64,000 nt of DNA from the IMG/VR virus record IMGVR_UViG_3300025098_000012, positions 62,001 through 126,000 of that record, one strand, 5' to 3'. The stretch's first letter is position 1, and every line of letters begins with the position of its first letter. The notes beneath the pieces are model-generated. The model was not told where the DNA came from, did not search any database, and saw only the letters and a list, made by a program, of their open reading frames with translations. A program made the position numbers and the translations under genes. Positions 27,703 to 63,200 of this stretch are shown here, piece by piece.

Positions 27703-28440
27703 ATGTATGACAAGATCGCTTATCTAAGATTAAGAATTGCTCGCCTTGAGCGACTTGCTGACTTAAGACCAGGTCTTGGTACAAAAGACCCCTGCTACAT
27801 TATTCAGAGAGCAGTTAACAATAGGGCTGACATCCCCAAAACTAGGTATGTCAAAGATGTGTTGGAGGATCTTGACCTCGTCACATACGGAGCTTCTGGT
27901 CGTAGTGGGTTAGAAGACATTCCTAGTAGAGATAGGGATGATTGGTATGGTCTGACTTACCCTCGCAGATTGAAGGAGAGAGTAGAGGGCGAGGAGATTA
28001 CATACGGAAAAGGTGGGAAAAAAAAGCTACCTGTCAACATTCCACATCTCACTTATTCTCAACACGCTCAGTTTAGAATGGATCTGAGAGGAGTGACTGT
28101 GGAACAAGTAGAAGCTGTTGTGAAGCACTGGCATACACAGCAGAAAAGAGTAGTAGAAGGTATGCGAGATTATGACCGACTAAAAGAAATCTCCATGAAA
28201 AATAAAGATGAGCATGATTTAATCAGAGATAACTTGAACTGGTTGAAGAACACACTGCAACCCGATGAGATCGAAAAGATGAAGAACGATATGAGAAGGC
28301 TTAATCGAGAGATGGAGATCAACCATAAATATATGGGTGTCTTCGTAGGGTTTGTTCCTCAGAAAGATGGGAGTATAGACATCAAGACCGTCTTTGATCT
28401 TAAGAAATCAGATCAGCCCTACAGAGGTTATAACTGCTAA
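27703..28440 (+). CDS. RIARLE-leader protein with DUF4258-like (toxin RNase-like) motif
   Basis: N-terminal LRIARLERLA; YSQHAQFRMDLRGVTVEQV. Confidence 0.6.
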   Translation: MYDKIAYLRLRIARLERLADLRPGLGTKDPCYIIQRAVNNRADIPKTRYVKDVLEDLDLVTYGASGRSGLEDIPSRDRDDWYGLTYPRRLKERVEGEEITYGKGGKKKLPVNIPHLTYSQHAQFRMDLRGVTVEQVEAVVKHWHTQQKRVVEGMRDYDRLKEISMKNKDEHDLIRDNLNWLKNTLQPDEIEKMKNDMRRLNREMEINHKYMGVFVGFVPQKDGSIDIKTVFDLKKSDQPYRGYNC

Positions 28441-28445
28441 GACAT

Positions 28446-28781
28446 CTACTCTGAGAGCTTCATCTTTTGGAAGAACTTTCGGGACTCCTCTAAGAAGTAC
28501 GAGATAAACTCAAGGTTGGTGATGTTTCTTTTGTACCTTGAACTATCTGACTTATATTTGTACTCAAAAAAGATGACATTATCCTCTGAAAAGAGTTGGG
28601 TGCTGAACTTATCATCTTTTGTATGTGTCCACACCTCTTTTCGATCAGTGGCTTGGAAGCCACATTCTACTACGAGTATTTTGAAGATGGATTCCCTATT
28701 AAGTTCTTCTGTCTGCGAAGTTGTGAGGTCTGGATTAGCAATCCTCACTCCGTTTTGTTTAACTGTCAGCATCGGGTTCAT
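28446..28781 (-). CDS. Member of the NG.R / GF paralogue family
   Basis: MLTVKQNGVRIANP nearly identical to the N-terminus of 46840; VECGF. Confidence 0.7.
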   Translation of the reverse strand: MNPMLTVKQNGVRIANPDLTTSQTEELNRESIFKILVVECGFQATDRKEVWTHTKDDKFSTQLFSEDNVIFFEYKYKSDSSRYKRNITNLEFISYFLEESRKFFQKMKLSE

Positions 28782-29475
28782 CTTTCATATAGATGGCAAC
28801 CCGATCAATAGCACAGCTAAAGACCCTCGCTGTAGACTCGTTGAACTCACCTGTTAACAGAAGATCGAGGACTTGACCTTTCCATACTAGAGGGTTGTTG
28901 CTTGTTAAGTTTACGATATATCTCAAAGCCGTTTGGATTTTCCCCCTTGAGTTTTCATGTTCGGGGTTGATTGAAAGAAGGGCATCCATCAATCGAACTA
29001 CATACTTTGAACTGATAGGGTTAGCTACCTTCTCTCTTATATCTTTCTCATCAAGGATTTGCTTGAGTATGTTAGGAGTATGGGTTGTGCAGTTGAGCTT
29101 ACGACCCGATTGATAGTAAGCGTTGACTGCCTCTATCTTGTCCTCGTCTGAGATCTTATCGACCTTACGCTTATAGGTTTTGCGTGTAGTAGGGTTCTCT
29201 AAGCGTACCTTCAAGGTTTGACCCGACACACCGTACTTTCGAGCAAGATCTTCGATCAGACCATTAGCGTCTGCTTCTTTGATCTCTTCAATAGGGATCG
29301 GGAGCAAGAGGTGCTGATAGCTTGTTCCTTTGATCTTAGGTGTTCCTTGTCGTAAAGTCTTTACAACCACGACTGGATGTTCGTTGTACTGCTGACCGAT
29401 CTCTTCTGGCGTCTTCCCCTCTTGCATGAGGTTATGCCACTCCACTCTCATCTCTGACTTGGCTTTCATGTTCAT
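28759..29475 (-). CDS. Multi-HTH DNA-binding protein
   Basis: EGKTPEEIGQQYNE; IEDLARKYGVSGQTLKVRL. Confidence 0.65.
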   Translation of the reverse strand: MNMKAKSEMRVEWHNLMQEGKTPEEIGQQYNEHPVVVVKTLRQGTPKIKGTSYQHLLLPIPIEEIKEADANGLIEDLARKYGVSGQTLKVRLENPTTRKTYKRKVDKISDEDKIEAVNAYYQSGRKLNCTTHTPNILKQILDEKDIREKVANPISSKYVVRLMDALLSINPEHENSRGKIQTALRYIVNLTSNNPLVWKGQVLDLLLTGEFNESTARVFSCAIDRVAIYMKDEPDADS

Positions 29476-29612
29476 CTCCACTTGTTCACGAGGTTGTTGA
29501 AAGCTGTAGAGTCTTTGCCCTCAGCCATGACCTTGTAGAAGGTGGTTCGCACCTTGTTATTGATAGCTCGAAGCTGTGCCTCTTTAGATACTTTGTTCTT
29601 GATCTTCTTCAA
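29472..29612 (-). CDS. 46-aa basic protein not in the ORF track (MKKIKNKVSKEAQLRA...NKWR)
   Basis: TTG start after SD AAAGGAGA; TGA overlaps the next ATG. Confidence 0.65.
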   Translation of the reverse strand: MKKIKNKVSKEAQLRAINNKVRTTFYKVMAEGKDSTAFNNLVNKWR

Positions 29613-29664
29613 ACTCGGTTCTCCTTTCGGGAGGGGCTGTTTATATGATCTTATAGGTAAGGGG

Positions 29665-30081
29665 TTACGACCTCTTGAACTTGACTTGGTAGGTCTGCAT
29701 TGTTTCGAGGTTGGGTACAGCGTAGAACGCTTCCTTTACTTCTTCGGGTGCATCCCGAAACTCAGACCATCTGATCGTGTATGAGTGAGCGATGTACTGA
29801 TCGAAAAGATCCTCCCCGATAGCGTCCTCGATGTCGTTGATGTCTACCGACTCTAGCTTAGGTGTCGGGGGTTGCTTCTCCACCCTAGTCGTGTATTTGC
29901 CCGATGCAGACTCGATGATGAGATCTTGTTCGTCTGCCATTTCGATCAGTTCAGACTTGAAGCTCTTAAGAGACTTACCGAGTCTGTTCTGTGCTTCCCA
30001 CAGCCGAGAGGCCGCTTCGGTTCGCTCGTTGATGTCGAGGTTGGTGTCGTTCATTTGGTTCATGAGTGCGTTGAAGTTCAT
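29665..30081 (-). CDS. Hypothetical protein
   Basis: Start re-assigned after GGAGA; stop inside the motif. Confidence 0.75.
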   Translation of the reverse strand: MNFNALMNQMNDTNLDINERTEAASRLWEAQNRLGKSLKSFKSELIEMADEQDLIIESASGKYTTRVEKQPPTPKLESVDINDIEDAIGEDLFDQYIAHSYTIRWSEFRDAPEEVKEAFYAVPNLETMQTYQVKFKRS

Positions 30082-30112
30082 TTTATTCTCCGTTTGTGAA
30101 GTGATCGTTTGA

Positions 30113-30760
30113 TTATCTGTTGAGGTTAAGTTCAGTGAGGATATGAGTAGAAGTTTCACCACTCATATCCCATTGGACGGCAACTTGGTGGAAACCTTGA
30201 CCGTCTAGGTTCGGGTTCTTTTGTGCATCCGAGACAAGGAAGCCTTTCATGTGTGGGTCTGACTTGAGAACTACCTCATTACCTCTCGTGAAGTGAGGAG
30301 CTAGTGATTCACAGACCCTATAAGTTTCATTTAAGATGTGCCTTTCTCCTGGCTTTGGCAACCGAACCTTAGTTGCAGAGTCTCGAACCATACAGGACTT
30401 ATGGGTGATTACATCATAGACGAACAACGCCTTGCCCGACCCTTGCATTGGCTCTTTAGCGTGGATTATAAACCCTTCGATGCCTCGCTTGTCTTTACTC
30501 CCCTTAGTGACTTTGACAGGTGTTCCAATCTCAAGGTTGGAATACATCGTTTCCATCTCAACCTTGAGTCCTTTTTCAAAGGCTCGAACTTGAGACTTAA
30601 CCAAGTCTCCATTCACTAGCTGTTGGATTAAGTCGGTGTCATGCCCCTCGTAAGGGTGATCCGTTGAGTGAGTCTCGACAGGTAGGGGTTCACCCTTTAG
30701 TGCGAGGTGGACGCTCTTAGCGTACTCTAAGACATCTTCAAAAGTATTTTTTATCATCAT
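30113..30760 (-). CDS. Hypothetical protein with KOW/SH3-like segment
   Basis: IGTPVKVTKGS..RGIEGFI; SD AAGGAGA. Confidence 0.7.
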   Translation of the reverse strand: MMIKNTFEDVLEYAKSVHLALKGEPLPVETHSTDHPYEGHDTDLIQQLVNGDLVKSQVRAFEKGLKVEMETMYSNLEIGTPVKVTKGSKDKRGIEGFIIHAKEPMQGSGKALFVYDVITHKSCMVRDSATKVRLPKPGERHILNETYRVCESLAPHFTRGNEVVLKSDPHMKGFLVSDAQKNPNLDGQGFHQVAVQWDMSGETSTHILTELNLNR

Positions 30761-30784
30761 TCATTCTCCTTTTACGAAGTGGTT

Positions 30785-31540: not shown

Positions 31541-31629
31541 AGTTTATCTCCTTTAGGAGTGGGTAGGTGAGCGATCTCGCCTTTCAAGAGTTAATAGATA
31601 AGGGGTTACGGAGTGCGATCCCCCCGACT

Positions 31630-32769
31630 TTACATATCAATCGGGCAAACATCAGAGGAAGCTCGGCTTTGAGCGTCTACCACATCAGATCGGAGGTAGG
31701 GGTCTATTGCTCCCTCAAGAGCATCTTGGTTATGCTTCTCATTGAGATGCCCCTTGATGATTGCAAAGGATCGCTTGAGAGCTTTTTTAAAGTCGGTGAT
31801 ACCCAAGTCCTCCATGACGGTGAGGCAAGCATGACCCCATTGTTTACCTTGACGCAAAGTTATTTCCATGCCCATGTCTTGCTCTTCTGCAACCTTACGG
31901 ATAGCTCGGTTGCAGTCCACCAAGAGCTTGATTTGGTCTTGGTCGAACATGGGAAACTCAGCCTGTACCACCATCCTCTCGAACTTGGGAGTTGGAGGAG
32001 GAGCGTAGATACCAACACAGCGAGACAGGAGACTAGAGTCTTTCATCTGAGTGATGTTGCCCCTACCTCCATCTCCATCAGCCCCACTATTGCTCGTAAA
32101 GTAGAAGCGAGTGTTAGGCAAGATAGTGAACATCTCACCTGTGATCGGGTTGGTCAACTTTTCTTTACCCAACTCAAGAGCTTGGCGAAGGATCTCAAGT
32201 TGGTCGGGTGTGGCTCGATCATAGTCAGAGAACAGGATCATGGCAGGTACTGTGATGGTCAGCATACCATCATCATTCACAACAGTGTATCCCACTTTCT
32301 CCATGCCCTTGACTGCATCAGAGAGCTGTTGCTCAGTAGCCCCTGTAAAGTCTCGCTTACACGACACTCCACGACAAGCCTTGAGCAGATCACCCTCGAC
32401 CTCTTTAGTCATCGTGCCACCTTTACCATCACCCACAAGAGTGGTTCGATAGATCCAGTCAACAGGGTTAGTTCCTTGCTTGAACGCAAAGCGAGCGAGA
32501 GGAAGATTGAAAGCGTGGCAAAACGCTTCAATCAAGATGTCTTTGCCTGTGCCTGCTGGCCCCGACACGATCAGATGGTTTATCTTACTGAAGAGAGATG
32601 CGTCCTGCATCCACCCCTCCCCACAGTCCTCGACATAGTTGTCGGGACGCTTGGCAGGGTCAAAGCCTGCGTTGATGATCTCCATAGCTGTTAGGGGCGA
32701 CATGGTGCGTTTCACACCACAAAAGAAGTTGTAGGCTAAAGTATATAGTTCGGGTCGCTGTCGAGACAT
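31630..32769 (-). CDS. MoxR/CobS-type AAA+ ATPase
   Basis: Walker A GPAGTGKD; atypical Walker B ILFSDYD; FYFTSN; LLSR; ITLRQ. Confidence 0.85.
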   Translation of the reverse strand: MSRQRPELYTLAYNFFCGVKRTMSPLTAMEIINAGFDPAKRPDNYVEDCGEGWMQDASLFSKINHLIVSGPAGTGKDILIEAFCHAFNLPLARFAFKQGTNPVDWIYRTTLVGDGKGGTMTKEVEGDLLKACRGVSCKRDFTGATEQQLSDAVKGMEKVGYTVVNDDGMLTITVPAMILFSDYDRATPDQLEILRQALELGKEKLTNPITGEMFTILPNTRFYFTSNSGADGDGGRGNITQMKDSSLLSRCVGIYAPPPTPKFERMVVQAEFPMFDQDQIKLLVDCNRAIRKVAEEQDMGMEITLRQGKQWGHACLTVMEDLGITDFKKALKRSFAIIKGHLNEKHNQDALEGAIDPYLRSDVVDAQSRASSDVCPIDM

Positions 32770-32822
32770 AGGGTTCTCCTTGTCGAAGTGGTTGCGTTGA
32801 TGTAGTTCTCATAAATAAGGGG

Positions 32823-32864
32823 TTACGGTTCAGAGCCTCGCTCCATGACCTTATACAATCTCAT
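32823..32864 (-). CDS. 13-aa mini-ORF MRLYKVMERGSEP between two motif copies
   Basis: GAGGGAG before the ATG; stop is the TAA of the next motif. Confidence 0.4.
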   Translation of the reverse strand: MRLYKVMERGSEP

Positions 32865-33055
32865 GAGGAAATGCTCCCTCACACTAGGATATAAATAAGG
32901 GGTTACACTATATACACATACGAATGATAGGATCTCCAACAAGAAGCGTAAGTACTTGATTACCTAGCAAAAAGCCTAAAGTGTAACCCCTTATCTATAG
33001 AGTAGTGTAGGGCGATCAAGCCTACCAACCAATCACTCCCACTAAGGAGAACAAA

Positions 33056-33223: not shown

Positions 33224-33313
33224 CCCCTTATCTAAGACCCTGTGTCGAGGACTGATTTTCCTCGCTTTCATATAAATACAAGACTACCCACTCACTCACC
33301 AAAGGAGATCCTT

Positions 33314-50706: not shown

Positions 50707-50745
50707 AAAAGAGCCTATCTTCCTTATGGGGGGATAGGCTCTTTT
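50707..50745. terminator. Bidirectional intrinsic terminator
   Basis: AAAAGAGCCTATC...GATAGGCTCTTTT between convergent genes. Confidence 0.85.
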
Positions 50746-51394
50746 AAGTCTCTGACCACCTAAAGAAGCGATCATCTTCTTTGTGGGTGATCCCTTTACG
50801 CTTCACTTTACCTGCCTTCTTGCCACGCACATAACGCTCAAAAGAGGTAAAGTGTTTACGCTCTAAGTCCGAGAGATCATCAACGGTGATTTCTTCTTCA
50901 ACTAAGAGCCAAAAGCGACTTGCCGCTTTAGCTACCCAGAAGGCATCTGCTTGGTGATTATTCCACCTCTTAGCACCTTGACCATCGGTAGCTTGTTTAG
51001 CGGCATCCACCATATCTCCTTTACCCATTTTCCAACCTTTGGGTCTATTGAGGAAAGCGGCAGCATGGGCTTTTACTTGATTGGGAGAAAGGTAAACCGT
51101 ATCGCATTTCTCAAGCATGAGTGCTTCATTACTGTAGAGGAACAGACCATACATTCCCTCTGAGAAAAGGTCATTAAAGATTGGTGATTCTATACCAACT
51201 CTTAAAGTCTCTTCTGGATGATCTGCTCTGACTTGCTGTACGATTTCTCTTAGACCTTCTCGTAGGGTGATGTAGCGTTCAACGAACATGGTTTTGGCAT
51301 CTGTTTTCATTGTACCCTTATCCAAAAAGTGTCCATCATCACGAATGAGAGTCCATCCAAAGTTTCTGAGAGAGGGGTCAAGTCCTAAAATCAT
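50744..51394 (-). CDS. ruvC: RuvC-like Holliday junction resolvase
   Basis: ILGLDPS..NFG; GIESP; VKA; ADAFWVA. Confidence 0.8.
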   Translation of the reverse strand: MILGLDPSLRNFGWTLIRDDGHFLDKGTMKTDAKTMFVERYITLREGLREIVQQVRADHPEETLRVGIESPIFNDLFSEGMYGLFLYSNEALMLEKCDTVYLSPNQVKAHAAAFLNRPKGWKMGKGDMVDAAKQATDGQGAKRWNNHQADAFWVAKAASRFWLLVEEEITVDDLSDLERKHFTSFERYVRGKKAGKVKRKGITHKEDDRFFRWSET

Positions 51395-51459
51395 TTGTAG
51401 ATCCTTTATTAAAGTCTTTATATATCTTTATATGATACCTCTTTTTAAGGAGAAAACAC

Positions 51460-52455
51460 ATGAGACATGATAACAGTTATCGTAGAGCAAAACGCTCTTA
51501 TCGTGAGGCTTCAATGAGCCGACAGGCAACAATGGAGCGTATTGCAGGGCTTGAGATGAAAGTAGCGGCGATGGAATACCAAGCAGGAATGAAAGACTCA
51601 CTTAAGGGTTTATTCCTCAAGTATGTCGCAGAGCCTCTTGATAAGTATCGCAGGCATCTTAACCTCTTTAAGATGCCTGTTGACGATCTCATGGACGATG
51701 TGATTGAGGCGATTGCACCAGAGTATGCTGAAAAACTCATGGAGGCTGAGGTAGACGCTGACTTTGAAGAGTTTGAAGCAGGTGCTAAACTCCGACAAGA
51801 AGAGAGAGCACATGGTCAATCAAAGTTCCCCCCTCGTGGTAAGTCTCCCGAATTCTATGAGGGATATGGTTGGGGCGACAAAAATGATGGACCAGTTCCA
51901 AGAGAGGTAAAGAAGCGTATCATTCAAGAAGCCGCTCAAGAACACAGCAAGAAGGTTACCGAGAGAGCTTTGAAAAAAGTTCTTAATGTAATCAACCCTG
52001 TTGAGATTATCAAACACGCTTACCACATCGTCAAGAAGCATGGCTGGGATCCTCATGCTGAGGAGATTTGGTATAAGAAATGGCCTAAGCGTCTGTTTAA
52101 GGTTGTTCTAATGGCTATCGGCATGGCTTTTGTAGAAGCGATTGAACACTATGTCTTGCCTGCAACAATGGTTAAGATCACAGGCAATCCTGCTTGGTGG
52201 GGTCTTGCTTCTGTACCACTCCTTGAGATCATCTTACCTATCGTTCTTGCTTACTTCAAGGGAGCTAAAGGCGATGCTGTTGAGGAGCCTGGACACCTTG
52301 ATTGGTACGAAGAGAACTATGGAGAAATCGAGGAAGTTCTTGACGATAATGTCTTTGAAGATGATGATGATGATAGCCGAGTAGCGAGCTATCGTCCTCG
52401 TGGTCGCAGAGCGAGCTATCGTGATCTAGCCCTCAAGTTTAACTACAACCTTTAA
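51460..52455 (+). CDS. Probable virion-packaged protein with hydrophobic segments
   Basis: ERIAGLE N-terminal motif; RVAS/RRAS repeats; two hydrophobic stretches. Confidence 0.65.
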   Translation: MRHDNSYRRAKRSYREASMSRQATMERIAGLEMKVAAMEYQAGMKDSLKGLFLKYVAEPLDKYRRHLNLFKMPVDDLMDDVIEAIAPEYAEKLMEAEVDADFEEFEAGAKLRQEERAHGQSKFPPRGKSPEFYEGYGWGDKNDGPVPREVKKRIIQEAAQEHSKKVTERALKKVLNVINPVEIIKHAYHIVKKHGWDPHAEEIWYKKWPKRLFKVVLMAIGMAFVEAIEHYVLPATMVKITGNPAWWGLASVPLLEIILPIVLAYFKGAKGDAVEEPGHLDWYEENYGEIEEVLDDNVFEDDDDDSRVASYRPRGRRASYRDLALKFNYNL

Positions 52456-52466
52456 GGAGAACCCCT

Positions 52467-52790
52467 ATGAGAAGGTCAGCACAACAGACCATCCGTAATC
52501 TTGAGCAACGCATTGCTCATCTTGAAAACCGATCTGCAAGCAGTTCCGATTTAAGCTCTTTGGTCGAAGCAATAGAGGCTCTTGACTCAAACATTCACAA
52601 ACTTGAGAGATCGTTTGATGATTGGTCTACCGATGCAAGTGGTTCTGGAAGAAGCCTACCACCTTCTTTTCGAGCAGGTGATATAGAGAAGGTTTATGGC
52701 ACTCTCGATGATCTGATTGAGATGAAGGATAGACTTTCTGAGGCACATCGTCTACTGCTCAAAATAAAAAGACATGACGAACTAGGGTAA
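52467..52790 (+). CDS. MRRSA..LEQRIA.LE leader protein
   Basis: N-terminus matches 62799-63200. Confidence 0.75.
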   Translation: MRRSAQQTIRNLEQRIAHLENRSASSSDLSSLVEAIEALDSNIHKLERSFDDWSTDASGSGRSLPPSFRAGDIEKVYGTLDDLIEMKDRLSEAHRLLLKIKRHDELG

Positions 52791-53228: not shown

Positions 53229-53604
53229 CTGTACTATCTGCGAGTACCCATAACAGAGCGGCTACATCGGGGTACTTACCCGCTATCTTACCCATGTCGC
53301 CCTCATTGATGAGAGCATCAAACTCAAACTCGAACTCTTCTTTGATTTCTTGCTCGTTTTTATCGGGCTTAAAAAACGGACAGGTGTTTGGCACAGAGGG
53401 GTCGCATATAACACCGTCCCACTCTTTAGGCTTATCTGCATCTTGTAAGCATACATAAAAAAGGGGATCGTTAGCGTTCCCCTTCACTTGTCCAGAATGA
53501 GAACAGTTGCAAGGCTTCTTCGACCCACCATTACGAATGGCTTTCTGAAGCAGTCGATGTTTAACTTGCTTGAGTTTATGTCTTACAGCACCTTGTTTCT
53601 TCAT
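53203..53604 (-). CDS. Cys-rich hypothetical protein
   Basis: PCNC..C..C..CPFF. Confidence 0.7.
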   Translation of the reverse strand: MKKQGAVRHKLKQVKHRLLQKAIRNGGSKKPCNCSHSGQVKGNANDPLFYVCLQDADKPKEWDGVICDPSVPNTCPFFKPDKNEQEIKEEFEFEFDALINEGDMGKIAGKYPDVAALLWVLADSTDENEDDDD

Positions 53605-54221
53605 TACTTTATTCTCTTTAAGGTTGCACCGTTCTTACTAGGTGTGATCTTATAGCCTATATCACAGTTATCTGCGATGGTCGGATCATGTGTAATACAC
53701 AATATATCCATATCTAACCGTTGGCAGAGGACTTTTAGAAAATCGACTAAGATTTCGACCCGATTTTCGTCTACAGCAGGGAATGTTTCATCAAGAATGA
53801 GGACAGGTCTTAGGTTTCTCTTGAGGATAAGGGAAATCCTCAGCAAGAGGCTTTGTATTGTGGTGACAGCTCCACCGAAAGCATCTAACCCATCACCCTC
53901 AATCTCAAGCCCATCTTGACCCTTAAAGGTGGTTTTGAGATTGACTGCTACCTTACCCCTTACCTTTGTTATTTCGGCTGTTAGCCCGACCTCTTGGTCG
54001 GGGAATATAGCCTTCAACCCTTCTTCTAAGAGGGAGATATAGGTAGATACCCCTCGCTCCACCTCATCTTGAGCGAGAGTATCAAGGATAACTCCAGCTT
54101 CCGTCTTTTTGTCCTTATCAAGCTCAAGGAAAGCGATCTCGGTTTCGAGATCGTCTATGCGTTTTTCACACGACTCCTTGAGCGTTTTTAATCGGTAAAA
54201 TCGGGAAGCGAGATCATTCAT
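53604..54221 (-). CDS. Rad50/SbcC/SMC-type ATPase, C-terminal half only
   Basis: Coiled coil; signature FGGA; Walker B ILDETF; ITHD; no Walker A. Confidence 0.8.
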   Translation of the reverse strand: MNDLASRFYRLKTLKESCEKRIDDLETEIAFLELDKDKKTEAGVILDTLAQDEVERGVSTYISLLEEGLKAIFPDQEVGLTAEITKVRGKVAVNLKTTFKGQDGLEIEGDGLDAFGGAVTTIQSLLLRISLILKRNLRPVLILDETFPAVDENRVEILVDFLKVLCQRLDMDILCITHDPTIADNCDIGYKITPSKNGATLKRIK

Positions 54222-54225
54222 TACA

Positions 54226-55431
54226 TTAAAGCATCCAACCTATAATAGAAACGGTCTGTACTCCAGAGTCTTGATCGGACTTGAAAAGCATATAACCCTT
54301 CTTGCCCTCACGAGTACATCCAAATACGATGTTATCATTATAGATTTCTACAGCTTTTTTGATCGAAAGATAGTTGAAATCGAAAGTGGCAATGTCATTG
54401 CCTTCACCAGCTTCTTTCAAACGAGTCGCATACATCAAGTTAGAGAGGTCAGTGATCTCTTCGAGTGGCTTCTCTGCATCCTCGAATGGAGGTACTTCGA
54501 GGTTATATGAGAGCGTCTTACTGTTAGACGAGTTCATCTCAAGACTAGGGGGTAATAAAGCCTCATCTTCGGGGTCTTTGAATGTGATTTTATAGTTGGT
54601 CTTATCGGCAAACGCTGACAAGAATGTAAGCCCATTCATAAAGTTATCCTTAGACAACCTCCAAACCCTACGAGGTGTCCAGTTAAACGCATCAGCATAT
54701 TGTTGTGTGATGGGAGGGTAGGTGTACGGTAGATCCATTACAGCGAATAACGCACCGTCCTCTGCCTTGAAGAATGTTGCTTGACCACCACTAAGGACTT
54801 CAACCACATTCCCTTCATATGATTTGAGGAACTTCATCAGTGGTGCGATGTCTTTATAATGGATCTTTACATCCATCCCTTGAAGGTCATCGTGCCGAGA
54901 CATATTAAGCATATACCCATCACAGGCAATCGCTTTGCCACCCTCGATCAAGATCATTGCTAGTTCTGGTCTACGACTGTCATCTTGTGATACATATTGC
55001 CTATTGGTATTAAGCGTATCATAAAGGATAGTAGCAGAAATCTCTCCGACCTTAGTTGCTTGTCCGAACTTCTCGACCCAAGGAGGGAAGGCTTCGGGAT
55101 CTAATGAGACAGTGGTGGCTTCACCCTCACTACCCTTTAAGGATACTTCTTTTTCCTCATCGTTGTACTCAATCTCAACGACACCTGTCATAACATTAGT
55201 CGCTGTGATCAAACGCTTACCCTCGATAGAAAAAGACCCTTTATCTTGAACAGTAGCACCGATGACAGGGATCTTTGAAAACTGACGAGGAGGAGAACAA
55301 GCCATGACACTCACACCTGCTTCTTCGGCTGTGAAGATAAAGTGTGATGTGATGTCTTGGTTTGTACCCAAAGTGTTTTGAGCGATTGATAGGGTTTCTT
55401 TTAAATCCTGTGCTGAGACTGTAATCTTCAT
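54226..55431 (-). CDS. dnaN: DNA polymerase III beta sliding-clamp-like protein
   Basis: MKITV...L...L; SQDDSRRPEL..I....ACDGYML resembles DnaN. Confidence 0.75.
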   Translation of the reverse strand: MKITVSAQDLKETLSIAQNTLGTNQDITSHFIFTAEEAGVSVMACSPPRQFSKIPVIGATVQDKGSFSIEGKRLITATNVMTGVVEIEYNDEEKEVSLKGSEGEATTVSLDPEAFPPWVEKFGQATKVGEISATILYDTLNTNRQYVSQDDSRRPELAMILIEGGKAIACDGYMLNMSRHDDLQGMDVKIHYKDIAPLMKFLKSYEGNVVEVLSGGQATFFKAEDGALFAVMDLPYTYPPITQQYADAFNWTPRRVWRLSKDNFMNGLTFLSAFADKTNYKITFKDPEDEALLPPSLEMNSSNSKTLSYNLEVPPFEDAEKPLEEITDLSNLMYATRLKEAGEGNDIATFDFNYLSIKKAVEIYNDNIVFGCTREGKKGYMLFKSDQDSGVQTVSIIGWML

Positions 55432-55734: not shown

Positions 55735-56709
55735 TTACTTCATATTGAGGTTGATAATCCCCCCTCCTTGTTCAGTGGGGTCGGGAGACTTTGTTTTTCC
55801 TAGACCACGCTTGGCCGCGTTTCGCTTCTTTTGAGCTTGACGCTCTTCACAAATGTTCTCGAACTTACACCAAGTACAATGCTTCGGGATTGGGTTAGGT
55901 TCAAAGACTCCCCTATGAATAGCACGATTGGTTTCAATCGCTTCTTTACCCAACCTACGAATGTCGTCATCCGTAATAGACACTTCTACAAATCCAGTCC
56001 AATCAGCGTCTTTGTCAGCAAAGTGCTTTTCGGGTGGGTTTGATCGAGGATACCTAAAATAAAAGAACCCAAGTCTATCTGGTACTTTCCCATACTGTAA
56101 TCTAAAACAAAGAGCATACCACCGAAGCTGATCTTCGTCTTCATACTTCATTGGAGTAGATGCGTTCTTACCATCAAGGATATGAACCTTGCCCTCCGAG
56201 TCTCGATATACAAGGTCGGCAATACCACATACATTAAAGTATTTGTTCATAGATGGGGTCATACGCAACTCAGACTTGGCGTAAGGACCGAGAAATCTAT
56301 GCTCTTTCAAAATCTCAAGGAAGTTCTGAGCACCTCTTTGGCAGATGTCCATTGCTTCTTCTCTAGTCATATATGACCAAATCACATAGTGTCTCTTCTC
56401 TGCTTTGGCGAACGCTTGGTCTACAACTTCCTTGATCTTTGTCTGTATCGTCTTAGGGTCACGATACAGTTCATGGTCGTATATTTCCTCTACCACAGTT
56501 GATAGGACTGTACCCATAAGTTGATGATGCTCCGAGTCTTTTGACTCATCTGGTAAAGGTTTTCTTTTCCCCTTACCTGCTCCAAGATCATGGTCGGGAT
56601 GTCCTTTATGCCATAGATACTGCTGAGGACACGCTCTCATCATTTTCAAGTGAGACCAGTATATGTTTCTCATGGGATCTTCCAATGCTTCGGTGTTAGG
56701 TTCACCCAT
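55735..56709 (-). CDS. PD-(D/E)XK nuclease (RecB/AddB/Cas4-like) with Fe-S cysteines
   Basis: ACP; GIADLV..ILDGK; QLRWY; CTWCKFENIC. Confidence 0.85.
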   Translation of the reverse strand: MGEPNTEALEDPMRNIYWSHLKMMRACPQQYLWHKGHPDHDLGAGKGKRKPLPDESKDSEHHQLMGTVLSTVVEEIYDHELYRDPKTIQTKIKEVVDQAFAKAEKRHYVIWSYMTREEAMDICQRGAQNFLEILKEHRFLGPYAKSELRMTPSMNKYFNVCGIADLVYRDSEGKVHILDGKNASTPMKYEDEDQLRWYALCFRLQYGKVPDRLGFFYFRYPRSNPPEKHFADKDADWTGFVEVSITDDDIRRLGKEAIETNRAIHRGVFEPNPIPKHCTWCKFENICEERQAQKKRNAAKRGLGKTKSPDPTEQGGGIINLNMK

Positions 56710-57696: not shown

Positions 57697-57698
57697 TC

Positions 57699-58925
57699 TT
57701 ACTTAAAGAGATCATCAAGCTCGTCCATAGCCGCTTGACCATCATCACTAAGTTTGCTTGATGCTTCGGCATTGATTTCGGGTTCATCTTCCTTCTTCTT
57801 GGAAGTGAGATAAACACGCACTTGACCAAACATCACATCAAGCCAATTTTCGGGTAAGAGCTTTCGGAAGCCATCAAGACCTTGACCTTTATGTTCTGTG
57901 CCTGTGTTTGGATTAGCCCAAGAGTACCAAGCACCACCCTTCTTCACGACACCGACAGAAATAGCAAGATCAAGCACAGTACGCTCATTATCTACACCAA
58001 TCCCATTCATAAGGTAGAACTGAGACTCATGCTTGTAAGCGTCTGACACCTTACACTTATCGAGTGTAGCACGAACGATGTTGCCCTTAACGGTATCAAT
58101 CATCTTGTTCTGTAGACCATCCCACTCTTTACCTCGATCTTTACCGATCACACGAAGCATGATCTTGAGGCTTGAGTAGTAAGTCCACGCTTGACCACCT
58201 TGTGGTTTACGAGTCGGTCCGCCACCAAAACCACCCATACCACCAATCGCTTCACGCAACTGAGAAATCCCGATGACCCCTGTATTCGAGTCTGCAATCA
58301 CACGCTTAAATAAAGGTAGGAATTGCGACCATTGACGAGCGAGAAGTCCGACAGCCGCTTGATCACCTGCTTCCTTTTGGAACATCTTTTCGGGAACACC
58401 TGCACCCACAGAGTCAACCACGATCAGATCGACTCCTGCTGAGGCGAACTTGACCATGAGCTTGAAGCCTTGTTCAAGGGTTTCGGGTTGTAGGAGCATG
58501 AACTTGCTTTTATCAGTGACAGGTACACCGAGCATTTGAGCGTAGCGAGGCTCAACTTCATTTTCCCAGTCAATGTAGACGCAAGTACCACCCTCCTCGC
58601 TACAGACCGAAGCGGCTGTCTGTAAAGCGATAGTGGTTTTACCTGCACCTGCAAGTCCATAGATGTTGGTGATGCGTCCACGAGGTATGCCTGGACAGGG
58701 GCGAACACCTTGAGCGTTCTCTTTACCTCCGATGAGATAGTCGAGAGAAACAGAACCTGTGCTGATATGAGCCATAGACTTTGAGAGAGAATCGAGATCA
58801 AGCTCCACAAGAGCCGAGTCTTTCTGACCCTTTTCAGCTTCGTTGAGGACACCTGCGAGATCGACACCTTTTAAGGCCGACTTCACCTTTGAAGATTTTG
58901 ACTTTGATGTTTTGGCTTTAGCCAT
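57699..58925 (-). CDS. recA: RecA/UvsX recombinase
   Basis: ISTGS..LD; GIPRGRIT.IYG..GAGKTT; YID.E; IVVDSV; ISQLR; KGGAWYS. Confidence 0.95.
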   Translation of the reverse strand: MAKAKTSKSKSSKVKSALKGVDLAGVLNEAEKGQKDSALVELDLDSLSKSMAHISTGSVSLDYLIGGKENAQGVRPCPGIPRGRITNIYGLAGAGKTTIALQTAASVCSEEGGTCVYIDWENEVEPRYAQMLGVPVTDKSKFMLLQPETLEQGFKLMVKFASAGVDLIVVDSVGAGVPEKMFQKEAGDQAAVGLLARQWSQFLPLFKRVIADSNTGVIGISQLREAIGGMGGFGGGPTRKPQGGQAWTYYSSLKIMLRVIGKDRGKEWDGLQNKMIDTVKGNIVRATLDKCKVSDAYKHESQFYLMNGIGVDNERTVLDLAISVGVVKKGGAWYSWANPNTGTEHKGQGLDGFRKLLPENWLDVMFGQVRVYLTSKKKEDEPEINAEASSKLSDDGQAAMDELDDLFK

Positions 58926-59038
58926 AAACGCACTCCTTAATGATGAGGTTAATAGAACGACTTCAAGACCCTTATATGATCTTCTCATTTATAGTCTATT
59001 TATAATTTTTATTTCTATGTGAGAGGAGATCCAAAAAC

Positions 59039-59371: not shown

Positions 59372-59373
59372 TC

Positions 59374-59694: not shown

Positions 59695-59696
59695 AT

Positions 59697-59912: not shown

Positions 59913-59915
59913 GAT

Positions 59916-60794
59916 ATGGCTATAAAATATGATGTAACCATGAAAGAACGATACTTAGCTGTCGTCCTTCTTGACATAATAGGCAGTACAGCATTTGTTC
60001 AGAGGAACGGAGCTGTGGTTGCCGCGAAATGGTTTCAAGTACATGACCGTCTTGCTCGGTCACTTGTGTATAAGCACAGTGGAAGAGAGATTGATCGGTC
60101 TGATGGATTTCTTTTGTCTTTTGATCGAATCATTGATGCTGTTAACTTTGGGTTAGCGTATCAACGAACAGTACCTAAAAAAACCAACCTACAAACCCGT
60201 ATAGGCATCCATTGGGGAAGGGTCATCGAAGTAAAGCAAGATGATGTGTTCGTTGGTGCAGGAGCTAAGAGAGTTGAACTTGAAGGTCTAGCTAAGAACA
60301 TCGCCGCTCGAACGATGAGTCTTTGCCAAGCAGGGCAGGTACTTCTTACTAAAGAGGCCATGTCAGCAACAAGAAATCGTACATCACACAATCTACCCAA
60401 AGATGCGAGGTATGTCTGTGTTGGGATGTACAAGTTCAAAGGTGTAAGTAAGCCACAAGAGATATACGCTGTAGGTGAAACGATACAATCATTACAGCCA
60501 CCTAAAGGGTCGGACAAAGTTAAACGACTCGGAGGTCCTAAGTACATCCGTAAGAGAGCTAGGGATCGAAAGTTTCTCGATTGGGTTTCCTATATCTTTT
60601 GGAGGTTAGGGTTTTTAGCAACACTCTTTTGGATTTGGGTCATTTTTCAGATCTCATTAGTACCCATGACAAGAACTTGGATAGGTCTGCCTTACCATAT
60701 GCCTCGATACGATGCTTTCATTGAGTATGTTGTGGACTCCTACAACTCTTTAACGAATCAAAAAAGAAGCCCTAAAGAACGGAGGCGAAGATGA
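59916..60794 (+). CDS. Class III nucleotide (adenylate/guanylate-type) cyclase with C-terminal TM
   Basis: VLLDIIGST; SDGFL; RIGIHWG; NIAAR; FKGV; TM helix near C-terminus. Confidence 0.85.
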   Translation: MAIKYDVTMKERYLAVVLLDIIGSTAFVQRNGAVVAAKWFQVHDRLARSLVYKHSGREIDRSDGFLLSFDRIIDAVNFGLAYQRTVPKKTNLQTRIGIHWGRVIEVKQDDVFVGAGAKRVELEGLAKNIAARTMSLCQAGQVLLTKEAMSATRNRTSHNLPKDARYVCVGMYKFKGVSKPQEIYAVGETIQSLQPPKGSDKVKRLGGPKYIRKRARDRKFLDWVSYIFWRLGFLATLFWIWVIFQISLVPMTRTWIGLPYHMPRYDAFIEYVVDSYNSLTNQKRSPKERRRR

Positions 60795-61309
60795 ACCAAA
60801 CAAATAAACAATTTACACAGTCCGAGAAAGCAAAAAGAGGGTGGTGGGCTTCAGTAGTCTTTATGTTCCTTATCTGTGTTCTGATCTACTTTCTCTCTAC
60901 CCATGAGATCGTAGAGAAGAATAGAGATATATTGATCGGGATCATAGGTATGCTTACTGGTAGTATCTCGTCCATGTTAGCTATAGCGAGTGGAAGAGAT
61001 CCTTCTGAAGTAGAAGAACTCAAAGACAAGCTCGCTTCAGCCAATGGGGATAGGGAAGCGTTAATCGCTCGTCTTAGAGATGCACAGATACAGATGCAAC
61101 TACTTAGAGAACAAATCTTTGAGCTTCAATCTGCTGTGATAGATAAGTTGTCCGTATTTCAAGGGCAGACAGTTATTAAGACTAAGACTGAGGAACAGGT
61201 AAAACTCAAAGGTGTTGTCAGTCAATGGATCGACCCGAAGAAGAAATCAGACGATGAAGAAGATGATGAAAAAGTAGAGATCACTTTCGAGGATGGGGAT
61301 GATACTTAA
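60791..61309 (+). CDS. Two-TM plus coiled-coil membrane protein (holin-like)
   Basis: TM-NRDIL-TM; ATGA-coupled to the cyclase. Confidence 0.65.
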   Translation: MNQTNKQFTQSEKAKRGWWASVVFMFLICVLIYFLSTHEIVEKNRDILIGIIGMLTGSISSMLAIASGRDPSEVEELKDKLASANGDREALIARLRDAQIQMQLLREQIFELQSAVIDKLSVFQGQTVIKTKTEEQVKLKGVVSQWIDPKKKSDDEEDDEKVEITFEDGDDT

Positions 61310-61360
61310 TAAGTCCTTTATGATCTCCCTATAGGTAAAGCATTTATATGGGAGGTCATT

Positions 61361-62737
61361 ATGGCACAGCATGGTTGGTACGACAGTAGAAGTCCTTATC
61401 CAGTCCCACCAAGAAATACAAGTGCTGTCTCCCCTTTCGCTAGGGGTGAGATAGATGTCCATTGGGATAACCCCTCTATCTTACATGGTAATGAGGGTTG
61501 GATTATTCGAGGTGTGAACATCTACAGATCGGGCAACTCTGATCGCGGTCCTTATCGTAGGGTGAACATCACTCCTATTGGGGGAACGATCTATAGAGAT
61601 CGGATCGACACATGGGCTGTCAACGATGAAGTCATCACAGCAGATAAGTGGATTTCCAAAGGTGATCAAGGTGAAGATCCTTATCGCTTCCAAGTAGAGT
61701 ATCCCATAGCTCGTCAAAATAGTATCAATGATCCTGCTGACTCTCCGAGAGATGTAGTGGTAATGATTAACGGTGTAATCGTACCTACATCGAGAGTGCT
61801 TGGTGAGTTTGGTGAAGTAACTTTATTCTATGCAGGCAGAGCCATACCCGATGCGATCACTTTAACAGAAGATAGTTTACCTCCTCCTATAGATGACAAT
61901 ACAGTGGTCACGATCAGTTATATTGCTTATGATCCAGAGAGTCGTTTAAGGATTGGCACTGATAAGCGAGATTTCTATCGGGTAGTCACAGTAGCAGAAG
62001 ATCCTAGAACTGGCACATTACATGAAACTCCTTTAGAGCATTGTAAACCATTTTCGGATCGTGAGCTTGAGCGTGTAGATTATATGTGGAGAGAAGGTAT
62101 TCGCAGAAACAACTGGATACTTGAACAGGGAGGTGAGCGAGTTAAGTTATTTACTCGCAGGATAGCAGGTATTCCTTGTTATTGTACCTCCTTCGACAAA
62201 GAGACTCTTAAATATGCGAAGCAACCCGACAGTCTTTGTACTATCTGTTTCGGTACAGGCATTAAGGGTGGGTATGATGGCCCTTACGACATCATAGTCG
62301 GCCCTAATGACAGTGAGCGTAGGATTTCTCAAGAGGATCGAGGTAGACGCAAGGAACATTCATATGAAGTATGGATCGGTCCAAGTCCTATCGTGAGTCA
62401 AAAAGACTTTATCGTTAAACCTAATAATGAACGGTACTCCTGTGGTGCAGTTAATATGCCATCCAATAGGGGTAATGTTTTACAACAGCATTTCAATATA
62501 GCGTATCTTGATAGTGGCGACATACGATATAGATTCCCTATTGAGGGTGTTCCTGTATCATGGCCAGAGACTCGTTATGGGTATTGGCCTCAGAGAGATA
62601 CCTACACAGCTCGTGGTGATGCTGTTTATCCTGTTACACCCGACAGTGCTTATCCTATGGATTCAGACAAGGCTACTGTATCTAATGCGTTGGAGAAGCG
62701 AGGTCGTACTGCAACTTGGGAGAATCAGAACTATTAA
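61361..62737 (+). CDS. Probable head-completion/neck virion protein
   Basis: FN3-like VHW...NIYRS; CYC...CTICFGTG..GGY. Confidence 0.6.
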   Translation: MAQHGWYDSRSPYPVPPRNTSAVSPFARGEIDVHWDNPSILHGNEGWIIRGVNIYRSGNSDRGPYRRVNITPIGGTIYRDRIDTWAVNDEVITADKWISKGDQGEDPYRFQVEYPIARQNSINDPADSPRDVVVMINGVIVPTSRVLGEFGEVTLFYAGRAIPDAITLTEDSLPPPIDDNTVVTISYIAYDPESRLRIGTDKRDFYRVVTVAEDPRTGTLHETPLEHCKPFSDRELERVDYMWREGIRRNNWILEQGGERVKLFTRRIAGIPCYCTSFDKETLKYAKQPDSLCTICFGTGIKGGYDGPYDIIVGPNDSERRISQEDRGRRKEHSYEVWIGPSPIVSQKDFIVKPNNERYSCGAVNMPSNRGNVLQQHFNIAYLDSGDIRYRFPIEGVPVSWPETRYGYWPQRDTYTARGDAVYPVTPDSAYPMDSDKATVSNALEKRGRTATWENQNY

Positions 62738-62798
62738 TAGTTTATTTATCCCTATCAATAAGTGGTCATTCTAACCTTAACCAAATGGAGAACTCCCT

Positions 62799-63200
62799 AT
62801 GAGAAGATCAGCATCAGAAATTATCAGTGAACTTGAGCAACGCATCGCTCGTCTTGAAGGTCGTAAGTCTTCTTTGAACCTCGATGGTGTGCTTGATGGT
62901 ACATCCTCTATGTCTAAGGTTGAGTTAAGTGATCTTGCTGTCAATAAGATGAGAGACAGCATGGATAACTATCAAGAGAGAAAGATCCAATCTATGCTCG
63001 AAGAAGCTCAAACTCAAGGGCAGGCTGATTTGAAAACTGCTATGGAATGGAGTGCTAGGAAAGTTTCGGGTCAAGTAGCGTCTAAAAAAGGATTGAAAGA
63101 CTTTACGCACATGAGGGGTTGGCCTGTAGAGTTAGGTAGGGAAGCTCGTTATTGGATGTACTTTGCTTTGATCGCTAAAGGCATCATCAAACAACCCTAA
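62799..63200 (+). CDS. MRRSA..LEQRIARLE leader protein
   Basis: Late-type motif plus SD GGAGA. Confidence 0.75.
   Translation: MRRSASEIISELEQRIARLEGRKSSLNLDGVLDGTSSMSKVELSDLAVNKMRDSMDNYQERKIQSMLEEAQTQGQADLKTAMEWSARKVSGQVASKKGLKDFTHMRGWPVELGREARYWMYFALIAKGIIKQP

What the first reader, a model, noticed from the sequence alone, without database searches (positions are those of the whole stretch)
27703..63200. Shared N-terminal 'MRRSA..LEQRIARLE' leader on unrelated proteins
Seen: 62799 (MRRSASEIISELEQRIARLE), 52467 (MRRSAQQTIRNLEQRIAHLE), 27703 (LRIARLERLA), 51460 (ERIAGLE) and more weakly 56812. Their bodies are unrelated, all lie downstream of late-type motifs, and R/K-x-A motifs recur. Known: T4 internal proteins use a cleaved capsid-targeting sequence. 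Inference: a portable packaging tag for injected cargo.
Basis: partly seen in the sequence, partly recalled or inferred. Interest (0 to 1): 0.65.

Follow-up and report, generated by a model that had tools for sequence, protein, structure and literature searches.

The report
Shared N-terminal leader on phage proteins
A marine huge phage puts the same 24-residue helical leader on dozens of otherwise unrelated, fast-turning-over small proteins made alongside its virion genes, which most likely addresses them to the assembling capsid, though that is not shown.

Summary
Two window genes (62799, 52467) start with M-R-R-S-A-S-E-[IV]-I-R-N-L-E-x-R-[IV]-A-R-L-E-[RK]-Q-[AS]-[SAG]. The 226.7-kb phage contig holds 12 such genes. 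A complete 375.7-kb relative holds 31. A profile search finds 1,111 protein clusters (50% identity), nearly all with the leader at residue 1.

- **Selection acts on the peptide.** Invariant Arg15 uses all six Arg codons, and synonymous sites are near saturation.
- **Bodies are unrelated.** They lack Pfam domains (one WGR). Eight of 12 are missing from a relative whose capsid protein is 100% identical.
- **Expression signal.** Most copies carry a promoter-like motif that also precedes the capsid, portal, baseplate and tail operons, but no identified replication gene.
- **A second leader.** A sister phage (capsid protein 89% identical) lacks this leader and has a different one on its own gene set.
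- **Weaker sites.** 27703 and 51460 are only degenerate look-alikes. 56812 is not a member.

Best reading: a T4-CTS-like prohead-targeting, probably cleavable leader (confidence about 0.4). Packaging, cleavage and injection are inferred, not shown. The one complex prediction gave no verdict.

The parts
62734..62752 (+). Promoter-like motif (TTAATAGTTTATTTATC) of the family gene at 62799
   Evidence: PWM score 28.1. There are 46 such sites in the genome against 1-3 in shuffles. The same motif heads the capsid-protein, portal, baseplate and tail operons.
62753..62798 (+). Conserved 5' untranslated stretch with a GGAG ribosome-binding site (..ATAAGTG.TC...TAACCTTAACC.AATGGAGAA..)
   Evidence: Aligned in 38 family genes from several phage contigs (A4). 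RNAalifold predicts no conserved base pairs.
62799..62870 (+). Leader, 24 codons (MRRSASEIISELEQRIARLEGRKS)
   Evidence: Translation; profile hit at 44.8 bits; logo from 73 members.
62799..63200 (+). Family gene, 133 aa: leader, then a polar linker, then a helical body of unknown function
   Evidence: Its relatives are 4 clusters at 77-92% identity, and the four retrieved all carry the leader, one with four residues deleted. The AF2 model has low confidence (pLDDT 44): helix 5-25, gap 26-39. A complete close relative has only a 32%-identical body.
52467..52538 (+). Leader, 24 codons (MRRSAQQTIRNLEQRIAHLENRSA)
   Evidence: Translation; profile hit at 51.3 bits.
52467..52790 (+). Family gene, 107 aa. 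It has no promoter-like motif of its own and starts 11 nt after the stop of the 51460 gene
   Evidence: The same gene pair and junction occur in an IMG/VR relative (L060). The close relative G001 has no body homologue.
51394..51412 (+). Promoter-like motif heading the 51460-52467 gene pair
   Evidence: PWM score 17.8, 47 nt upstream of the start.
51460..52455 (+). 331-aa protein with a degenerate leader-like segment (residues 15-32: R-E-A-S, 8 residues, R-I-A-G-L-E; nt 51502-51555). It has hydrophobic segments and a C-terminal ..RVASYRPRGRRASY.. that shares the hexamer ASYRPR with the scaffold-like protein
   Evidence: (0.5 bits). A possible remote relative, not a demonstrated member.
27646..27664 (+). 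Promoter-like motif upstream of the 27703 gene
   Evidence: PWM score 19.1, 38 nt upstream.
27703..28440 (+). 245-aa protein whose N-terminus (residues 5-16, nt 27715-27750) keeps the heptad core I..L...RIARLE but lacks MRRSAS. There is a weak sub-threshold DUF4258 match in the body
   Evidence: Linked to the family only by a short-query BLAST.

Best explanation
The leader is a portable address label, the huge-phage counterpart of the T4 capsid-targeting sequence.

Proposed mechanism:
- A roughly 16-residue amphipathic helix (hydrophobic positions A5, I9, L12, I16, L19, with conserved Arg/Glu/Ala on the other faces) sits on a flexible Ser/Arg/Ala/Thr-rich linker.
- It is placed in front of many small, unrelated, rapidly exchanged accessory proteins.
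- These genes carry the same promoter-like motif as the capsid, portal, baseplate and tail operons.
- The helix docks the proteins on a conserved partner in the assembling prohead. The most likely partner is the acidic scaffold-like core protein encoded between the prohead protease and the major capsid protein. The proteins are thereby enclosed.
- The leader is then probably trimmed by the prohead protease at the junction (candidate sites [RK]-x-A|[SAG], or after the invariant L-E).
- The bodies leave with the DNA at infection.

Shown: the family, its size, selection on the peptide, the helix-linker-body layout, the shared promoter-like motif, the rapid turnover of bodies, and the replacement of the leader by a different one in a sister lineage.

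Inferred: the partner, encapsidation, cleavage and injection.
For: 1. **A discrete family.** 12 copies in this contig, 31 in a complete 375,691-bp relative, at least 12 divergent copies in a complete 312,136-bp relative, 162 in IMG/VR, and 1,111 clusters at E<=1e-3 among 1.84 billion representatives, nearly all at residue 1.
2. **Selection on the peptide.** R15 is invariant yet uses six codons and A5 uses four. pS is 0.56 against pN 0.17. Copies without the conserved promoter/UTR keep the leader.
3. **Layout.** The AF2 model of one subfamily has a helix at 5-20, pLDDT below 50 at 21-26, and an alpha/beta body at pLDDT about 80.
4. **Shared promoter-like motif.** It also heads the MCP operon, the portal operon, the baseplate wedge gene and a tail protein gene. 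It does not precede the polymerase, helicase, UvsX or clamp genes.
5. **Head module.** The order is protease (phrog_18299), a 522-aa acidic scaffold-like protein, a 197-aa protein, then a 292-aa MCP. This is the machinery a CTS-type system needs.
6. **Junction motif.** [RK]-x-A-[SG] is 11-fold enriched at the leader/linker junction. R-x-A-S is 2.3-fold enriched in non-family proteins. It is conserved at four places in the scaffold-like protein across 11 phages, three of them also in the distant W01, and at residue 25 of the protease in both phages.
7. **A sister phage with a different leader.** LR745208.1 has an MCP 89% identical and none of these leaders. It has its own leader (TLRSKLIRLAHENPALRPQLLPLLKEA-[AG]) on 9 unrelated ORFs, and 46 distinct proteins with it occur in IMG/VR. 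That leader also ends in [KR]-x-A-small. The central part of its scaffold-like protein is unrelated to the one here.
8. **Turnover.** 8 of 12 bodies are absent from G001 (MCP 100% identical, 79% of the genome aligned at 86% identity), against 15% of other genes (Fisher p=1.4e-4). T4 internal proteins are described in the same terms: diverse proteins with only a conserved CTS (PMC3012670, PMC7411985).
Against: - There are no virion proteomics and no cultured relative: INPHARED has no match to the leader.
- The complex prediction of the leader with the scaffold-like protein scored 0.00, which is no verdict.
- Sequence similarity between the leader and the scaffold helices (RVARLA, ARLARK) is only marginal, 27 of 500 shuffles.
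- The leader has no T4-type [LI]-x-E site. An SPN3US-type A-x-E site occurs only at residues 5-7, not at the junction. Proteases of this lineage that have been studied cut after Glu, so the [RK]-x-A|S idea has no precedent in phages.
- The leader is much longer and more conserved than the T4 CTS.
- Thirty-one cargo species in one phage would be unprecedented.
- The bodies are not basic (median pI 5.4).
- One orthologue has lost R-S-A-S.
Confidence: 0.4

Rival explanations
1. The leader is a short leucine-zipper-like oligomerisation or docking helix unrelated to the capsid interior. It would make the small proteins dimerise or trimerise with themselves or each other, or dock on a common cytoplasmic hub such as a phage or host complex.
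For: - The heptad pattern is A5, I9, L12, I16, L19, with R15(g)-E20(e') charge pairs.
- The hexamer RIARLE is also the start of the c-Jun zipper.
- AF2 models it as a free helix on a flexible linker.
- Some database proteins carry a second, internal half-copy, R-[IV]-A-R-L-E-[RK]-Q-[AS]-S.
Against: - About 2.5 heptads is short for a stable zipper.
- The b, c, e and g positions (R10, N11, E13, R15, A17, R18) are as conserved as the hydrophobic seam. That points to one specific partner rather than generic self-association.
- It does not explain the promoter-like motif shared with virion genes, the junction motif shared with head proteins, or the wholesale replacement of the leader in a sister lineage.
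Confidence: 0.2
2. The leader is the conserved N-terminal anchor of exchangeable parts on the outside of the virion (head or tail decorations, adhesins). This would resemble the shared anchor domains of multiple receptor-binding proteins in some phages.
For: - The promoter-like motif is shared with virion genes.
- The bodies are extremely variable between close relatives.
- Some copies lie next to the portal, MCP-cluster and terminase genes.
Against: - The bodies are small (median about 118 aa after the leader).
- There are no Ig-like, beta-helix or fibre signatures. 66 of 69 and 139 of 144 have no Pfam match at all, and the only clear domain is WGR, a nucleic-acid-binding module.
- A 2.5-heptad helix is a weak structural anchor.
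Confidence: 0.1
3. The conservation belongs to a mobile DNA cassette (promoter, 5' UTR and start region) that spreads by recombination. The peptide would be a passenger without a function of its own, or the coding start would serve translation initiation.
For: - The promoter-like motif, a 45-nt UTR and the leader are conserved as one block in most copies (A4).
- Codons 2-3 are AGA in about 88% of copies. L12 and L19 are CTT in 24 of 24 here and in 58 of 62 and 53 of 62 elsewhere, although CTT is only 26% of Leu codons.
- Two promoter/UTR remnants without a leader gene exist.
Against: - Synonymous sites are near saturation while 13 residues stay invariant.
- Copies that lack the cassette keep the leader: 52467 and others.
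- The divergent variants in G002 keep the heptad core while changing the first seven residues.
- No conserved RNA structure is predicted.
Confidence: 0.05
4. The leader is a regulatory handle: R-x-x-S phosphorylation sites, a degron or a chaperone tag that controls the stability or timing of a set of accessory proteins.
For: - There are two or three R-x-A-S motifs per leader, and the motif is enriched genome-wide.
- The phage encodes a GroEL-like protein.
Against: - No kinase or dedicated protease other than the prohead protease was identified.
- The helix between the motifs is the most conserved part.
- One orthologue lacks R-S-A-S.
Confidence: 0.05

Closest known systems
T4 capsid-targeting sequence (CTS) of internal proteins IPI-III and Alt
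   Same: - A short N-terminal peptide is shared by otherwise unrelated, highly diverse small proteins.
- The phage has a prohead protease and a separate scaffolding core.
- The genes vary strongly between close relatives (PMC3012670, PMC7411985).
   Different: - There is no sequence similarity.
- The leader is 24 residues with 13 invariant positions, against about 10-20 loosely conserved residues in T4.
- There is no [LI]-x-E site at its end.
- There are 12-31 genes per genome against about 4 in T4.
- Packaging and cleavage are not shown here.
N-terminal propeptides of giant-phage head and ejection proteins (SPN3US, phiKZ), cut at A/S/G-x-E
   Same: - These are huge phages, and the protease has tblastn matches (under 60% identity) in Erwinia and Pseudomonas phage records, which I take to be giant phages of that group.
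- Their propeptides are proposed to target proteins into the prohead (PMC7411985).
   Different: - Those propeptides are 110-130 residues long and specific to each protein, not a shared cassette.
- An A-x-E motif occurs here only at residues 5-7.
Encapsulin cargo-loading peptides and microcompartment encapsulation peptides
   Same: A short amphipathic helix on a flexible linker addresses diverse cargo to the inside of a protein shell. Encapsulin shells have the HK97 fold.
   Different: This is a real phage with terminase, portal, tail and baseplate genes. There is no sequence similarity. This comparison rests on my own knowledge and was not tested here.
bZIP leucine zipper (c-Jun)
   Same: The hexamer RIARLE and the heptad spacing are shared.
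   Different: There are only about 2.5 heptads, no basic DNA-binding region, and the context is a phage.

Membership tests
T4-type capsid-targeting sequence system | A short N-terminal peptide shared by otherwise unrelated proteins of one phage | tested here: met
   12 copies at 45-54 bits against noise at 5 bits. The bodies are unrelated.
T4-type capsid-targeting sequence system | The phage encodes a prohead protease and a scaffolding core | tested here: met
   The protease matches phrog_18299 at 1.8e-15. The acidic 522-aa protein lies between the protease and the MCP. Its scaffold role is inferred from position and composition.
T4-type capsid-targeting sequence system | The leader ends at the protease's consensus site ([LI]-x-E in T4; A/S/G-x-E in SPN3US and phiKZ) | tested here: not met
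   There is no [LI]-x-E in the leader, and A-S-E occurs only at residues 5-7. A different junction motif, [RK]-x-A-[SAG], is present, but its cleavage is hypothetical.
T4-type capsid-targeting sequence system | The proteins are present in proheads or virions, and the leader is removed on maturation | not testable with these tools
   There is no cultured relative and no RNA or protein data.
T4-type capsid-targeting sequence system | The leader binds the prohead core | tested here: inconclusive
   Complex prediction of the leader (residues 1-45) with the scaffold-like protein: ipSAE 0.00, no verdict.
T4-type capsid-targeting sequence system | Sequence homology to the T4 CTS or internal proteins | tested here: not met
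   No Pfam or PHROG match for the window's family proteins P0001 and P0002 above noise. Pfam matched only a few of 69 and 144 further members, WGR being the only clear domain.
Leucine zipper / coiled coil | Heptad a/d hydrophobic pattern in a helix | tested here: met
   A5, I9, L12, I16 and L19 are invariant or nearly so. AF2 gives a helix at 5-20.
Leucine zipper / coiled coil | At least 3-4 heptads for a stable zipper | tested here: not met
   The conserved helix spans about 16-20 residues.
Tat / Sec signal peptide | A hydrophobic h-region after the basic n-region | tested here: not met
   The R-R is followed by a charged amphipathic helix with no hydrophobic stretch. Only 1 of 76 bodies has a TM-like segment.
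Structured RNA element in the mRNA start | Conserved base pairs with covariation | tested here: not met
   RNAalifold on 38 aligned cassettes predicts 0 pairs.

The most novel reading that the evidence does not exclude
Huge marine phages run an exchangeable address-label system. Each lineage would have its own N-terminal leader, matched to the variable centre of its scaffold protein. Through it, dozens of hypervariable effector proteins would be loaded into the capsid, released from the label by the prohead protease at [RK]-x-A|[SAG] (a specificity resembling herpesvirus assemblin, which, from my own knowledge, cuts at A|S), and injected with the DNA. If so, the injected proteome of an uncultured phage could be read directly from its sequence.
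Probability: 0.25. Interest if true: 0.85.

Novelty: new variant of a known kind. Interest (0 to 1): 0.62.

Why it matters
If the leader is a packaging label, it marks 12-31 genes per genome and more than 1,000 protein clusters as candidate injected proteins of uncultured huge phages. That class usually has to be found by virion proteomics, and it includes anti-defence factors in T4.

It would also give a ready-made tag for loading foreign proteins into very large capsids. The natural pair of different leaders on near-identical capsids would allow the receptor to be mapped.

Even without the mechanism, the leader is a simple sequence handle on the most rapidly exchanged gene set of this phage clade.

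Tried and rejected
- **Complex prediction.** Leader 1-45 (alignment A2) with the scaffold-like protein (alignment A5): ipSAE 0.00, no verdict, not evidence either way.
- **Leader mimics a scaffold helix.** Profile-against-scaffold scores with shuffles gave 27 of 500 for this phage. The other three leader/scaffold pairings gave no hit or 34-45 of 500, so the result is not significant.
- **RNA structure across promoter, UTR and leader.** No base pairs predicted.
- **Cultured relatives.** Megablast of 14 kb and tblastn of the 30-aa leader against INPHARED gave no match.
- **Body function.**
  - Pfam, first census (69 members): WGR in 2 and one weak HAAS hit.
  - Pfam, second census (144 members): WGR in 1 and four weak hits.
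  - Foldseek (PDB and BFVD) of the one confident model found nothing at E<=1e-3.
  - The model of the window protein at 62799 has low confidence (pLDDT 44) and was not searched.
- **PDB sequence searches** of the protease, the 1035-aa and the 1081-aa proteins found nothing useful.
- **Charge of the bodies.** They are not basic and do not differ from other small ORFs.
- **Tat/Sec signal.** Rejected, because there is no hydrophobic region.
- **Expression data.** Only marine DNA metagenomes hold the sequence and no RNA runs do.
- **Literature.** No paper was found that describes this leader.


Full report
**Setting.** The window is bases 62,001-126,000 of a single 226,698-bp contig, 43% G+C.
- It is a phage. 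The following genes were identified: major capsid protein (292 aa, phrog_2522, 2e-51), portal, large terminase, prohead protease, baseplate wedge, DNA polymerase, helicases, UvsX, sliding clamp and others.
- It comes from marine metagenomes.
- It is probably a fragment. The same proteins occur on contigs of up to 347,814 bp, and close relatives are complete at 375,691 bp (G001) and 312,136 bp (G002, with terminal repeats).

**The observation.**
- The ORFs at 62799 and 52467 share 14 of their first 20 residues.
- A regular-expression scan and then a profile of the first 22 residues were run against all six frames of the contig. They find exactly 12 copies at 45-54 bits. The next score is 5 bits. 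Ten of the twelve lie outside the window.
- From 73 non-redundant members the leader reads M-R-R-S-A-S-E-[IV]-I-R-N-L-E-x-R-[IV]-A-R-L-E-[RK]-Q-[AS]-[SAG].
- It is followed by about 10-15 residues rich in Ser, Arg, Ala and Thr, and then by bodies that cannot be aligned.
- The bodies are unrelated by BLASTP, except for one paralogous pair.
  - 27703 keeps I..L...RIARLE but not the first seven residues.
  - 51460 keeps R-x-A-S, 8 residues, R-I-A-x-L-E, but not the heptad Ile/Leu, and scores 0.5 bits.
  - 56812 has nothing.

**Size of the family.**
- G001 has 31 copies.
- G002 has at least 12 divergent copies, for example M-N-K-V-S-A-Q-Q-I-R-S-L-E-M-R-I-A-R-L-E-K-E-A-G. These keep the second two-thirds of the leader and vary the first seven residues.
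- IMG/VR holds 162 matches.
- A 30-column profile finds 1,111 clusters (50% identity) at E<=1e-3 among 1.84 billion representatives. Among the 150 best hits nearly all start at residue 1, and lengths run from 43 to 396 aa.
- A few proteins carry a second, internal half-copy (x-R-[IV]-A-R-L-E-[RK]-Q-[AS]-S). They look like fusions of two family genes.
- The same body domain occurs directly after the leader in one protein and 130-230 residues downstream in another. The bodies are therefore modular as well.

**Peptide or DNA?**
- Most copies share a block of DNA. It consists of a 19-nt promoter-like motif, a 45-nt untranslated stretch with GGAG, and the leader.
- Within the leader the selection is on the amino acids.
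  - Invariant R15 uses all six Arg codons, A5 uses four codons, and S6 uses both TCA and AGT.
  - Pairwise synonymous difference is 0.56, which is near saturation. Non-synonymous difference is 0.17, concentrated in four variable positions.
- Copies without the promoter/UTR block, including 52467, keep the leader.
- No conserved RNA structure is predicted.
- One point remains unexplained. L12 and L19 are nearly always CTT, and codons 2-3 are nearly always AGA. This is far beyond the genome's codon usage.

**Shape.** An AlphaFold2 model of the best-sampled subfamily (11 sequences) has pLDDT 75. It gives a helix at residues 5-20, a stretch below pLDDT 50 at 21-26, and an alpha/beta body at pLDDT about 80.
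- The hydrophobic positions A5, I9, L12, I16 and L19 form a heptad seam.
- The other faces (R10, N11, E13, R15, A17, R18) are equally conserved. That argues for one specific partner.
- The model of the window protein at 62799 is of low confidence.

**Expression class.**
- The motif TTAATAGTTTATTTATA has 46 sites in the genome, against 1-3 in shuffled sequence. Nearly all lie 10-60 nt upstream of an ORF on the same strand.
- Besides nine of the twelve family genes, it precedes the operon of the 197-aa protein and the major capsid protein, the operon with the portal, the baseplate wedge gene and a tail-protein-like gene.
- It precedes none of the identified replication or recombination genes.
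- In the window it sits before 62799, before the 51460-52467 pair and before 27703.

**Head module and a recurrent short motif.**
- On the minus strand of the contig the gene order is: a 1081-aa coiled-coil protein, the protease (479 aa), a 522-aa very acidic protein with an EF-hand and Glu-rich repeats, a 197-aa protein, and the 292-aa capsid protein.
- By position and composition the 522-aa protein is the scaffold.
- The leader helix is flanked by R-S-A-S (residues 3-6) and R-Q-A-S (residues 21-24), often with a third site such as N-R-T-A-S.
- [RK]-x-A-[SG] is 11-fold commoner at this junction than in the bodies.
- R-x-A-S occurs 34 times in non-family proteins, against 14.9 +/- 3.7 expected.
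- The scaffold-like protein has four such sites conserved in 11 phages, and three of them persist in a 40%-identical relative. The protease has one at residue 25 in both phages.
- I take this motif as a candidate protease site. That is an inference. Studied proteases of this lineage cut after Glu, and the leader's invariant L-E pairs are an alternative.

**A natural comparison.**
- LR745208.1 (485 kb, 55% G+C) has a capsid protein 89% identical and a protease 43% identical to those here. Its scaffold-like protein is alignable only at the two ends.
- It has no copy of the leader.
- It has its own, unrelated N-terminal leader, (M)-T-L-R-S-K-L-I-R-L-A-H-E-N-P-A-L-R-P-Q-L-L-P-L-L-K-E-A-[AG], on nine ORFs with different bodies. 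One of them lies beside its head genes.
- This second leader marks 46 distinct proteins in IMG/VR contigs of up to 485 kb. It is N-terminal in most, and it ends in [RK]-x-A-small in 30 of 46.
- So the principle, one leader on many bodies, is shared, while the label itself is specific to the lineage. The label changes together with the scaffold's centre and not with the capsid protein.

**Turnover.**
- G001 has an identical capsid protein, and 79% of this contig aligns to it at 86% identity.
- Eight of the 12 family bodies have no homologue there, one has a 32% match, and three are conserved.
- Among other genes 15% are unmatched (Fisher p=1.4e-4).
- Pfam recognises almost nothing in the bodies. 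WGR is found in 2 of 69 and 1 of 144.
- Foldseek finds nothing for the confident model.

- The matching features are a short conserved N-terminal helix on a flexible linker, many unrelated and rapidly exchanged small bodies, the promoter-like motif shared with virion genes, a protease-scaffold head module, and a junction motif shared with head proteins.
- I therefore rank a prohead-targeting, probably cleavable leader first, at about 0.4.
- It is not a member of the T4 CTS family in the strict sense. There is no sequence similarity, and the T4 and SPN3US cleavage consensus is not at the junction.
- The binding partner, encapsidation, cleavage and injection are untested. The one complex prediction I could run gave no verdict, and the similarity of the leader to scaffold helices is marginal.
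- The rivals are: a generic zipper-like docking helix unrelated to the capsid; an anchor for external virion appendages; a hitch-hiking peptide on a mobile promoter cassette; and a regulatory tag.

**Novelty.** No Pfam or PHROG family and no paper in the library describes this leader. I file it as a new variant of a known kind (portable capsid-targeting leaders), with function unproven.

Noticed in passing
Outside the window. Contig 19900-22314 (L001/L002), 32470-32949 (L002), 186306-186881 (L008), 201897-202451 (L009), 173994-177239 (L007), 221218-225034 (L010): A second recurrent short motif, [QKSN]-R-V-A-[STH]-[RK]-[YH]-[ML]-[KE] (as in MKPYQRVASRYMKAK), has 10 hits in six frames. It is N-terminal on six small, mostly unrelated ORFs. 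It is internal or C-terminal in the 620-aa and 653-aa proteins, and near the C-terminus of the 1081-aa protein next to the protease. It may be another address motif.
   Followed up: partly
LR745208.1 (loci L095-L119), e.g. L114:18480-18575 (-): The sister phage has a different shared N-terminal leader (TLRSKLIRLAHENPALRPQLLPLLKEA) on 9 ORFs. 46 distinct proteins in IMG/VR carry it.
   Followed up: yes
window 52467-52538 and 62799-62870, and all other copies: Codons for L12 and L19 are CTT in 24 of 24 copies here (CTT is 26% of Leu codons genome-wide). Codons 2-3 are AGA in 23 of 24. This gives a direct repeat CTTGAR 21 nt apart. It is unexplained and could be a DNA- or RNA-level signal on top of the peptide.
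   Followed up: partly
contig 214552-216306 (-), L010:7552-9306: One family member (leader plus WGR domain) has its leader at residue 314 of a 584-aa open frame that starts just after a perfect promoter-like motif. It is either a natural fusion or an internal start. G001 has the same arrangement in a 578-aa frame.
   Followed up: no
contig about 187941 (-) and about 205737 (-) (L008, L009): The promoter-like motif and the start of the conserved 5' UTR occur without a leader gene behind them. These are possible remnants of family cassettes.
   Followed up: no
contig 188865-190064 (+), L008:6865-8064: A 399-aa protein matches phrog_1211 (annotated 2-aminooxy adenylosuccinate synthetase, 1e-86). 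I take this to be PurZ-like. The phage might use 2-aminoadenine in its DNA, or this may be an ordinary PurA.
   Followed up: no
window 63207-64000 (-), continuing to contig 128329 (L005:207-3329): The large terminase is 1040 aa, with an extra N-terminal region matching phrog_9666 and an endonuclease-like family. It may contain an inserted element.
   Followed up: no
window 50744-51394 (-), 53604-55431 (-), 55735-56709 (-), 57699-58988 (-): A replication and recombination block on the opposite strand lies between the family genes: a RuvC-like resolvase, an ATPase, a sliding clamp, an exonuclease and a UvsX-like recombinase.
   Followed up: partly
window 9149-18262 (-): An open reading frame of 3,037 aa. 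It was not searched against any library here, so its function is unknown.
   Followed up: no
contig 170944-172512 (-), L007:7944-9512: The scaffold-like protein carries a canonical EF-hand (PF13202, 1.7e-9), which is unusual for a scaffold. It also has two copies of a ..ARxARxxxxLADNAVQVGT.Y motif and shares the hexamer ASYRPR with the C-terminus of the window protein at 51460.
   Followed up: partly
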